Source: Podarcis liolepis (taxonomy: Eukaryota). From it: a DNA stretch of 64,000 nt. Position numbers and translations under genes: made by a program. This document shows positions 48,701 to 51,700 of the stretch, in pieces (positions within the stretch are counted from its first letter, which is position 1; each line of letters begins with the position of its first letter). The stretch lies in NCBI GenBank assembly GCA_965112155.1, contig OZ218098.1; one strand, written 5' to 3'. Below the pieces are notes generated by a model. That model was given only the letters and a program-made list of their open reading frames with translations. It was not told where the DNA came from and did not search any database.

Positions 48701-51700
48701 TCTTAAGCAATTGTGCACTATCAGATTATGCCTTAATTTTTAAGAGATCCTGAGCATGCACTCTTGCACTCTGATAGAAAGTAGACTAATCAAGACTGAA
48801 GCCATGCCTAAATGGACAGATATGCATGTCTGTGTCTTCTAAAGTGAAACAGGGAGCAGTATGGTAATACTTCAGATGTAAACTGCATTTCTAGAACTCC
48901 CCTGTGACATTCCATTGGCGTTCTGTCATTTTACTGCAACTGCACGATGCAGTTACCTTAAAATCCACTGTACCAGGCAAGGGGTTACTCTACATCTTTT
49001 TCCAATGCACACAGCTGAAGTTTAAAAAAGACATCCATTTTTAATCTGCAGTTTTATGGATGGAATATCTGCTAGCTGTGCCCACAGCACAAGGGGAAGA
49101 GCTGTATGCTCAGAAAACACACATGGGACAGCCCTAGTAAGATGTCTAGCACTGGCACTGCAAGAACAGATCTTCTCTGCCTTGCATCTGGGTTTTGTCA
49201 TGCCTTTTAACTTCTATATAGTGTCTTCATCGAAATTTAGCTACTTTATTCCTGTGTGTAGAACAGGCACATGGCACTGGCTGTTTACTCCCCCAGATAA
49301 AGCTAGATTTGCCCATCTGCAAGTGGGCTGAGGCTACTGACTGTGGAGTTGTGTCAAAGCAATGTGGACTAGGCTGGTTGCTTGGAAACCAAAGCTGAAA
49401 TGGGGAGGTGGGAACAAGTGCCACAGGACTCCACAAAGCCAACCCTGCCGGTCACGTTCTGATCCGAATTCCCAGCTCTCCGCATGGAAATCTGTTTGGC
49501 CTGTCCTGCAATGCATGATGGGAAGTTTCCCCCTCTCTTACCACCCATGACTGTTTTATTTTATTCTGTGTGCTGCTTCTTACTTTATTCTTTCAACCTC
49601 TTCTCCTTCTTTGCACAGATATTATAGGCACGCTAAGGCCGGATGAGAAGGCCATTATGACCTATGTTTCATGTTACTACCACGCCTTCTCAGGTGCGCA
49701 GAAGGTGAGACTTTACTCCTAACAAACCCCCTCCTCTTCCTTCTGTTTCCCGCCCACCAAATTTAGAGGCAGATACCCTAAACCGTTAGAGGTATGGAAT
49801 CCAGTGCTGGCTGTCATATTGAGCTACCTAATATTGACACAACTTCCTTAGCATCTTGGGTGATTAAAAAAACACTCTCTAGCTTTGTTGAGAACTCAGT
49901 GGATTTTTTTTTCCCCAATGTAGTGGGTCTCTCTGCTTTTCCCCAGACAATATTTCTGGCCTAGAACACCCAAGTTGCAGCCTACTGGTTCAAATTAATA
50001 TTGTAGAATATATTCAATACTTTGCTGACAGATCAGATGACTTCCTATTGGAAAGTGCATTGCTAGTTTCAGCTGGGTGCTGGTTTCCTTAGAGCGCTCT
50101 GTTCTCAGTCATTTTTGGTGGCTGATACAACACTGGTCCACCATTGGCAATGCTAAGCCTGTTGGGAGTGTTTTAAAGACCCAGCTCTAGAGTTGCTTTT
50201 AGCCATCAGTAATAATTACTATAGGGCTAAACAACCTAGGTCAAAACTCCAAATGATGCTCAGTTGCAGAAGTTCTCTGATATTTTCCTCCGTACTAATC
50301 TTTTGCTCCAGACTGTAATTTCTGCAGCTGGATTTAGTTAAGAACATGTTCAAAAAAAGCTATGCGTGATTGAGCATCATGCGTAGATTGCTCCCCATTC
50401 ATGCAACCTAAAACCAATTGTTCAGCAGGGTTTATTTTATAAGCAAGAGGTCTCCGTTATTATTGGCAGTATACCAACGGTGGTCGTTAATTTCCGAGCA
50501 GCTACTTTTCCAAGTGAAGTCAGAAAATTGCCATTCAGCCTTTATGTGGCCATAAAAACAAAATCCCTCCGCTGCTTCTGCTGCTGCTTTACCATCAGTG
50601 GAATCTGGTCATGTCTACGTGGATATATATAAATGGCCACTTCTGCTTTGACAGGTGTTCTCTCAATGGGAGACCTCAGAATGTCTTGTTCTGTAGATGC
50701 CAAGCTCATGGAATTCCGGCTCAGTTTACTTATTGATTCATGGCCAAACTCTAGTGATTTGTGTAAGTTGGGATGGCTGTTCTCTTACATCTTTTTCACA
50801 CAGCCAGCCTTTGATGCCACAACTGATTATCACAGTCTCTGCATACACCTTTTAACTTTTTCTCTGCCCCACGTTGCTTCTCTTTGCTCCCATCCATCTG
50901 TGTCCTTCCTCTGCCGGTAGTTCTGTTGCTTTCCCTCCTCGTACCATTTACGGTGTCCCCTTACCCTTACGGCTTTTTTATCTATGTAATCATCTCTCAG
51001 TGGATTTATCCTCCCTTGACATTTTGTACTCGTCTGCAAAAATATTTGGCTTCTGTTGGTTCTTATCACGTCTTAGATGCATTTTGTGGGAAAGCTTTGA
51101 TTCAAACACACGTGTGTCATTAGCGTTGGCATTGACATCGTGCATCTATACCTGAGTAAAAGATGCCAAGGGGAAAACAGACCTTAGTCCAGGCTCCTTG
51201 GGCACACATTGGGCAATTAAACTCTGAAAAGGATAGCTGGTAATGTAACAAAACTCTCCTTTACTGAACCAGATAACCATTCCACAAAGTTTTCTTTCGT
51301 GGATCCTATTCTCCATTCTGCAGTCACATTGCATTCCTAACTTTTTCCTATCCCATATTTGTTGGTAGATTCACAGGGGTTCTCAGGCACAGGTGTAACT
51401 CTAAGCTGAACTGAAATATTGCAAACTAAGTTGAAAATGTTCGTTCTGGGGCCTAATTCAAATGTTACTGACATGCCATGTTAGCTGCTGAAAAACTGAC
51501 TTCACTGTGGCCTGCTCCCTTGGGCCTAACTCTACATACTGAATGAGATGCAACATAGTGTGAAAGGATATCCACCATTGCTATGGGGCTTCTCTTTCCT
51601 CTCTTCTCCACAAGCAAATTTCTGTTGCTTAAGCAGGCAGACAACATCAGATGTCACCAATATTTACAAGCATCTTCTCTGAAAGTACTAAAGGACATAT

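What the first reader, a model, noticed from the sequence alone, without database searches (positions are those of the whole stretch)
49619..49704. Hidden intact second exon 8 (8b) in ACTN1: a mutually exclusive switch in the actin-binding domain
Seen in sequence: an 86-nt paralog of exon 8a with identical phases and good splice sites. It differs from 8a at 10 codons synonymously and only 4 non-synonymously (V>I, A>L, S>C, F>Y), which indicates an old duplicate under purifying selection rather than a recent copy or pseudo-exon. Established knowledge: 8a/8b mutually exclusive splicing is known in ACTN4 and ACTN2, where the 8b form carries GTLRPD and YVSC. This CH2 helix carries the ACTN4 K255E/T259I/S262P mutations that alter actin affinity. 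As I recall, canonical mammalian ACTN1 has only one exon 8. Inference: this lizard ACTN1 retains the ancestral 8b and makes a second, probably neural or muscle-biased, isoform with different actin binding. The ORF track misses it.
Basis: partly seen in the sequence, partly recalled or inferred. Interest (0 to 1): 0.8.

Follow-up and report, generated by a model that had tools for sequence, protein, structure and literature searches.

The report
ACTN1 alternative exon 8b, already known
The lizard alpha-actinin-1 gene does carry an intact, strongly conserved second copy of exon 8 that can swap part of the actin-binding domain, but the same exon is already annotated in lizards and birds and was published for fish and coelacanth ACTN1.

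Summary
Window 49619-49704 is an 86-nt paralogue of ACTN1 exon 8a (47715-47800). It has the same phase, AG/GT splice sites, 10 synonymous and 4 non-synonymous codon differences, and dN/dS of about 0.07.

It is a real, ancient exon:
- Its peptide is identical to annotated bird and lizard ACTN1 8b.
- It differs from a bird-like contig by 3 synonymous bases only.
- About 190 nt of upstream intron is about 90% conserved over the same distance.
- Including both exons, or neither, gives a premature stop, as expected for a mutually exclusive pair.

It is not new:
- 8b-only ACTN1 isoforms are in public databases for Podarcis muralis (UniProt A0A670I1D9), zebra finch, kestrel, peafowl and NCBI Pogoniulus isoform X2.
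- Abascal et al. 2015 (PMC4494069) report this exon pair in ACTN1 of fugu, gar and coelacanth, but not human or mouse.

The scan listed this same stretch once before (s1-844357).

Verdict: correct annotation-level finding, already known, low interest.

The parts
45899..45980 (+). ACTN1 exon 7 ([27 protein letters not shown] plus the first base of the next codon); donor G|gtaaag
   Evidence: 100% match to Podarcis muralis ACTN1 P0299
47715..47800 (+). Exon 8a, the default form, 86 nt; peptide identical to human and chicken ACTN1; weak donor AAG|gtatcg
47801..47840 (+). 40-nt open extension of 8a ([13 protein letters not shown]) ending at a second GT (47841-47842). The same extension is used in NCBI bird and cobra models that join 8a and 8b in frame. 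Its real use is unknown.
   Evidence: P0172, P0177, P0180-P0183; the 4 differences from the bird-like L001 in these 40 nt all change the amino acid
49431..49618 (+). Conserved intronic element upstream of 8b, about 90% identical to the bird-like contig L001; it holds the polypyrimidine tract and a conserved UGCAUG at 49512-49517
49619..49704 (+). Exon 8b, 86 nt, alternative C-terminal part of the CH2 domain ([29 protein letters not shown]); acceptor ...ttctttgcacag|, donor AAG|gtgaga
52325..52620 (+). Second conserved block in intron 8b-9 (76% over about 300 nt, core about 90%) with a UGCAUG at 52615; possible splicing regulator or poison exon
55681..55773 (+). ACTN1 exon 9 ([31 protein letters not shown]), the common acceptor for 8a or 8b

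Best explanation
Window 49619-49704 is exon 8b of ACTN1. It is the conserved partner of exon 8a in a pair of mutually exclusive homologous exons that encode the last part of the CH2 domain of the actin-binding domain. A transcript takes 8a or 8b between exons 7 and 9. Each exon is 86 nt, so taking both with the normal donors puts a stop at the third codon of 8b, and taking neither puts a stop early in exon 9. Only single-exon mRNAs encode alpha-actinin, and the other forms are probably removed by nonsense-mediated decay. The 8b form changes four residues (V>I, A>L, S>C, F>Y) next to the positions mutated in ACTN4 kidney disease, so it plausibly tunes how the CH1 and CH2 domains close and how tightly actin is bound. 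The choice of exon is probably set by tissue-specific RNA-binding proteins acting on the conserved intron sequence around 8b. Shown here: the anatomy, the frame logic, purifying selection, and orthology to annotated ACTN1 8b in lizards, birds, coelacanth, gar and teleosts. Inferred: expression in this species, the regulators, and the biochemical effect.
For: Anatomy and selection within the window. Frame logic: 8b read after 8a gives I-L-stop; exon 9 read after exon 7 gives a stop about 14 codons in. Selection between species: versus the bird-like contig L001, 8b has 3 synonymous and 0 non-synonymous differences; versus the fish-like L003, dN is 0.063 and dS 1.7. Flanking intron is 92%, 80%, 100% and 88% identical in successive 50-column alignment bins upstream of 8b, while most of the intron does not align. 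Database models with exon 7 | 8b | exon 9 and no 8a: Podarcis muralis A0A670I1D9, Taeniopygia, Falco, Pavo, Buteo, Colinus, and NCBI alpha-actinin-1 isoform X2 of Pogoniulus. ACTN1-named models from Sphaerodactylus, Varanus, Latimeria, Atractosteus and ten teleost models (all but three named ACTN1) also carry 8b next to ACTN1-type exons 7 and 9, as does an Ophiophagus model named 'alpha-actinin, sarcomeric'. Literature: the 8a/8b pair occurs in ACTN2, ACTN4 and in ACTN1 of fugu, gar and coelacanth but not human or mouse, and dates to the bilaterian ancestor (PMC4494069). ACTN4 8b changes N>G, A>L and S>C beside the FSGS mutations (PMC4539665). Loss of exon 8 in ACTN2 gives a stop in exon 9 and NMD (PMC7782589).
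Against: The database isoforms are automatic predictions, and I could not see their RNA support. The direction of tissue bias and any change in actin affinity are untested. The conserved UGCAUG lies upstream of 8b, which in the usual Rbfox map means repression, so a neural or muscle bias cannot be read from it.
Confidence: 0.88

Rival explanations
1. 8b is a silent relic in this lizard: intact by chance or by recent loss of use, and never spliced into mRNA.
For: No RNA evidence could be obtained. Mammals are reported to have lost the exon from ACTN1, so loss does happen.
Against: The peptide is 100% identical to the bird peptide, and all 3 nucleotide differences from the bird-like contig are synonymous. 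The splice sites are consensus-like, with a better donor than 8a. About 190 nt of flanking intron is conserved. A related lizard has an 8b-only model.
Confidence: 0.04
2. 8b acts mainly as a dose switch. Its co-inclusion with 8a creates an immediate stop and sends ACTN1 mRNA to decay, so the exon regulates ACTN1 level rather than making a second protein.
For: Canonical 8a+8b inclusion gives ATA TTA TAG. The flanking intron conservation is typical of regulated exons, including poison exons.
Against: A poison exon needs no conserved coding frame. Yet 8b keeps its alpha-actinin reading frame with dN/dS 0-0.07 from fish to lizard, and it keeps the diagnostic residues shared with ACTN4 8b.
Confidence: 0.05
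3. In addition to the exclusive forms, sauropsids make an in-frame tandem isoform: 8a extended by 40 nt through a second donor (47840|gt), then 8b. This would insert 42 residues into the end of CH2.
For: NCBI Gnomon models in Tinamus, Aquila, Myiozetetes, Sturnus and Lepidothrix, and a cobra model, have exactly this structure. The extension is open and ends at GT in the window. About 150 nt downstream of 8a is conserved with L001.
Against: The 4 differences between lizard and L001 in the 40 nt all change the amino acid (S/P, H/Q, R/S, A/T), so the linker is not conserved as protein. A gene predictor may choose this donor only to keep the frame open. A duplicated CH2 helix is structurally odd.
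Confidence: 0.07

Closest known systems
ACTN1 exon 8a/8b pair in non-mammalian vertebrates (Abascal, Tress and Valencia 2015, PMC4494069; Ensembl/UniProt and NCBI isoforms of Podarcis muralis and birds)
   Same: Same gene, same position between exons 7 and 9, same 86-nt length. The peptide is identical to the bird and Podarcis 8b, and differs by 2-4 residues from coelacanth, gar and teleost 8b ([12 protein letters not shown][V/I][13 protein letters not shown][A/K]QK).
   Different: Nothing of substance. The paper names fugu, gar and coelacanth, not sauropsids, so the lizard and bird cases rest on database annotation rather than a published description.
ACTN4 exon 8a/8b (Honda 2004; PMC4539665; bioRxiv 10.1101/2024.10.05.616792)
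   Same: Homologous mutually exclusive pair. 8b shares Leu in GTLRPD and Cys in YVSC. It lies beside the FSGS mutation sites of the CH2 domain.
   Different: A paralogous gene. ACTN4 8b has VSCFY and DIV where ACTN1 8b has VSCYY and DII. ACTN4 8a has Asn where ACTN1 8a already has Gly. ACTN4 8b is retained in mammals.
ACTN2 exon 8a/8b (Lek 2010, cited but not held in the library; PMC7782589)
   Same: Same ancestral exon pair. Skipping gives a stop in exon 9 and NMD. It is regulated by QKI.
   Different: Sarcomeric paralogue. Its two exons are nearly identical in peptide (TPKPDE, VSCFY...AGAEQ).
ACTN1 exon 19a/19b (non-muscle/smooth-muscle EF-hand exons)
   Same: The other mutually exclusive pair of the same gene, tissue regulated.
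   Different: It affects calcium sensitivity of the EF hand, not the actin-binding domain, and it is retained in mammals.

Membership tests
Alpha-actinin exon 8a/8b mutually exclusive homologous exons | Two tandem homologous exons of equal length and phase between exons 7 and 9 | tested here: met
   86 nt each, same phase, 78% nt identity, 25/29 aa identical
Alpha-actinin exon 8a/8b mutually exclusive homologous exons | Canonical splice sites on both exons | tested here: met
   cag|...AAG|gtatcg (8a) and cag|...AAG|gtgaga (8b), with a long pyrimidine tract before 8b. No quantitative splice-site score was computed.
Alpha-actinin exon 8a/8b mutually exclusive homologous exons | Inclusion of both or neither breaks the reading frame | tested here: met
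   Both: stop at codon 3 of 8b. Neither: stop about 14 codons into exon 9. A +40 donor on 8a could restore the frame.
Alpha-actinin exon 8a/8b mutually exclusive homologous exons | Orthologous 8b in the ACTN1 of other vertebrates, with 8b-specific residues | tested here: met
   TLRPDE and VSCYY in ACTN1 models of squamates, birds, coelacanth, gar and teleosts, next to ACTN1-type exons 7 and 9; PMC4494069
Alpha-actinin exon 8a/8b mutually exclusive homologous exons | Purifying selection on the 8b coding frame | tested here: met
   dN/dS 0.07 versus 8a; 0 non-synonymous and 3 synonymous versus the bird-like L001; dN 0.063 and dS 1.7 versus the fish-like L003
Alpha-actinin exon 8a/8b mutually exclusive homologous exons | Transcripts that use 8a or 8b but not both, in this species | not testable with these tools
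Only predicted 8b-only isoforms of relatives are available.
Alpha-actinin exon 8a/8b mutually exclusive homologous exons | Different actin binding or tissue distribution of the two isoforms | not tested
   Needs RNA-seq by tissue and F-actin co-sedimentation. Conserved UGCAUG motifs are only a hint of regulation.

The most novel reading that the evidence does not exclude
The sauropsid ACTN1 8a/8b switch may be run by an ultraconserved intronic element of about 200 nt in front of 8b, which holds a conserved Rbfox-type UGCAUG, together with a second conserved block 2.7 kb downstream. It may also yield a third, in-frame product that carries both helices joined by the 13-residue extension of 8a. 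Loss of this whole module would then be a mammal-specific simplification of ACTN1.
Probability: 0.08. Interest if true: 0.45.

Novelty: already known. Interest (0 to 1): 0.2.

Why it matters
The finding confirms that a reader working from raw sequence can recover a genuine, ORF-invisible alternative exon. It adds a squamate data point to a known pattern: the bilaterian-age exon 8a/8b pair of alpha-actinin survives in ACTN1 of fish, coelacanth, birds and lizards, and is reported lost from human and mouse ACTN1. For specialists this is expected and already present in Ensembl and NCBI annotation. Its practical value is limited to annotation quality. Many third-party gene models wrongly chain 8a and 8b into one protein. 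It could also offer a possible model for asking what the 8b form does in a non-muscle actinin.

Tried and rejected
- **The look-up of encoding contigs** was tried for the genomic ORF hits P0001, P0002, P0006 and P0008. They were assigned indirectly by matching annotated proteins.
- **Lek et al. 2010** (PMC4125621, doi 10.1093/molbev/msp268) is not held.
No RNA junction evidence was obtained.
- **First guess on taxa, rejected.** I first took ORF hits P0001, P0002 and P0014-P0024, and contigs L001 and L002, for close lizard relatives. Their intron translation matches the starling model P0174, exon 7 has AEKYLD as in birds, and the 8a extension equals the bird one. They are therefore bird-like. 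This makes the conservation deeper than first thought.
- **Recent duplication or pseudo-exon** was rejected on dS of about 1.4 between 8a and 8b, and on cross-species conservation.
- **A third exon-8 copy:** the next tblastn hit (51463-51495, E 0.8, with a stop) is chance.
- **Joined model.** Exons were searched one by one by reference, and full-length comparisons used database proteins only.
- **Human sequence.** No contig that I take for human was fetched. Some short ACTN4-type ORF hits (P0003-P0005 and similar) are mammalian and were not followed.

Full report
**Observation.** The stretch 49619-49704 is an 86-nt open exon. It is preceded by a long pyrimidine tract and cag, and followed by gtgaga. 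Its paralogue, exon 8a, lies at 47715-47800.
- Both exons take the last g of exon 7 (45980) to complete an Asp codon, and both end on a full AAG codon. Both can therefore join exon 9 at 55681 in frame.
- The peptides are [29 protein letters not shown] (8a) and [29 protein letters not shown] (8b).
- Ten codons differ synonymously and four non-synonymously: V>I, A>L, S>C, F>Y. dN is 0.098, dS 1.42, ratio 0.07.
- The flanks do not align. No third copy exists in the window.

**Gene identity.**
- The 8a peptide equals human ACTN1 (PDB 2eyi) and chicken alpha-actinin (1sjj).
- A database ACTN1 fragment and the Podarcis muralis ACTN1 protein map exon by exon onto the window: exon 2 at 33590, exon 3 at 35764, and exons 4, 5, 6, 7, 8b, 9, 10 and onward. 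The exon in question is therefore the eighth.
- Exon 7 ([19 protein letters not shown]...) and exon 9 (...[14 protein letters not shown]) are ACTN1-type, not ACTN4-type.

**Relatives.** A word search with the open frame that spans 8b found short genomic ORFs with the same exon. An exhaustive HMMER search found 490 more. These fall into classes:
- ACTN1 8a;
- ACTN4 8a;
- ACTN4 8b ([29 protein letters not shown]);
- ACTN2 and ACTN3 types;
- insect and other invertebrate types with VSCYY;
- the lizard type;
- a type [15 protein letters not shown][V/I][16 protein letters not shown].

**Annotated proteins with 8b.** Two region-restricted searches with database proteins then gave named proteins.
- Models that carry 8b next to ACTN1-type exons 7 and 9 come from squamates (Sphaerodactylus, Varanus and Ophiophagus, the last named 'alpha-actinin, sarcomeric'), many birds, coelacanth, gar and ten teleost models. 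Most are named alpha-actinin-1.
- The STLRPDE...GKQK type is therefore fish actn1 8b.
- Several models are 8b-only, with exon 7 | 8b | exon 9. These are Podarcis muralis A0A670I1D9, Taeniopygia A0A674HN80, Falco A0A8C4VIL5, Pavo, Buteo, Colinus, and NCBI alpha-actinin-1 isoform X2 of Pogoniulus.
- No mammalian ACTN1 with 8b was among the 120 best rows of either search. All mammalian rows with 8b were ACTN4.

**DNA-level conservation.** A degenerate pattern for [18 protein letters not shown] found three metagenome contigs.
- L001 and L002 are one organism. They hold ACTN1 exon 7, 8a and 8b, and L001 also holds exons 9 and 10.
- I take L001 and L002 to be avian, for three reasons. The intron translation before 8b equals ORFs that match the starling model P0174. 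Exon 7 reads AEKYLD as in all bird models. The 8a extension reads VSQDPKLPPQSTP as in birds.
- Most of the introns do not align between the window and L001. The 308 nt around 8b are 92.5% identical, more than around 8a (86.5%), exon 7 (88%) or exon 9 (89%).
- Within 8b there are 3 differences, all synonymous. In successive 50-column alignment bins upstream of 8b, identity is 92%, 80%, 100% and 88%.
- L003 is a fish-like contig with the end of an 8a exon and, 1.9 kb downstream, the fish 8b. Against it, dN is 0.063 and dS 1.7.
- The coding frame of 8b has thus been held from fish to lizard.

**Mechanism.**
- If 8b is read directly after 8a, it starts ATA TTA TAG, a stop at codon 3.
- If exon 9 is read directly after exon 7, it hits a stop after about 14 codons. 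This is the same outcome as published for ACTN2 without exon 8, which is degraded by NMD (PMC7782589).
- Only one-exon mRNAs therefore encode alpha-actinin. This part is shown by sequence.
- The choice between exons is probably regulated. 8a has a weak donor (gtatcg) and 8b a near-consensus one (gtgaga).
- The intron before 8b and about 150 nt after 8a are conserved.
- A UGCAUG 107 nt upstream of 8b and another at 52615 are conserved in L001.
- By analogy, the exon-8 pair of ACTN2 depends on QKI and possibly RBFOX2. Which factor acts here, and in which tissue, is inference only.

**Protein effect.**
- The A>L and S>C changes are the same as in ACTN4 8b. They sit beside the ACTN4 FSGS mutations at the CH1-CH2 interface (PMC4539665).
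- ACTN4 8b has been reported to enhance stress fibres and migration (bioRxiv 10.1101/2024.10.05.616792).
- A shift in actin affinity for ACTN1 8b is plausible but untested.
- The Cys and Tyr-Tyr of 8b are also the invertebrate state. 8b is thus the more ancestral-looking copy, and 8a (VSSF) the derived one.

**What is known.**
[quoted passage not shown] They date it to the bilaterian ancestor.
- Martinez-Gomez et al. 2021 (PMC8373072) list the human event only for ACTN2 and ACTN4.
- Together with the annotated lizard and bird isoforms, the finding is correct but already known. Retention in sauropsids narrows the loss to the mammalian lineage, which is a small refinement.

**Limits.**
- The look-up of sequencing runs found DNA-like holders and RNA raw-read runs of a close relative.
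No transcript evidence for this species was obtained.
One search used window pieces beside them.
- The earlier-findings look-up returned the same stretch noted once before, and a note of an SRSF5-type gene downstream of ACTN1. That note fits the gene identity but was not checked.

**Verdict.** This is a real, conserved ACTN1 exon 8b that most likely works as a mutually exclusive switch in the actin-binding domain. It is already annotated and published for other non-mammalian vertebrates. Interest is low.

Noticed in passing
window 52325-52620: This block in intron 8b-9 is conserved with the bird-like contig L001 (core about 90%), while the rest of the intron does not align. It has an acceptor-like ttctcattcag| near 52363, a donor-like AAG|gtacag near 52450, a stop in the ACTN1 frame after 8 codons, and a UGCAUG at 52615. 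It is a candidate poison exon or distal splicing regulator.
   Followed up: partly
window 47801-47842: A second GT lies 40 nt past the 8a donor and keeps the frame open into 8b. NCBI models of five birds and a cobra model use exactly this to chain 8a + 13 aa + 8b. The 13 residues are not conserved as protein between the lizard and L001.
   Followed up: partly
window 49512-49517: UGCAUG (Rbfox-type motif) lies 107 nt upstream of 8b. It is conserved at the matching place in L001 (110 nt upstream), inside a stretch that is 100% identical.
   Followed up: partly
proteins P0165-P0204: Many deposited gene models hold both 8a and 8b in one protein, through invented linkers or intron read-through. This affects ACTN1 and ACTN4 models of frogs, bats, birds, lizards and fish. 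It is a recurrent annotation artefact at mutually exclusive exons.
   Followed up: no
runs X1-X12: Small libraries (85-153 million letters) from three studies of a related species hold 80% of the sampled words of 8b plus its intron flanks. This may be target-capture data on a conserved element. It is speculation, and ids and organisms are coded.
   Followed up: no
protein P0029: This genomic ORF of unknown taxon has an 8b-like exon [29 protein letters not shown] (E>M, I>L) and a similar upstream intron translation. It may be a more divergent ACTN1 8b, or one that is decaying.
   Followed up: no
L003:1-2085 (MDSQ01067579.1): This fish-like contig has the end of an 8a exon and, about 1.9 kb downstream, the fish-type actn1 8b with the same AAG|gtgaga donor as in the lizard.
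   Followed up: partly
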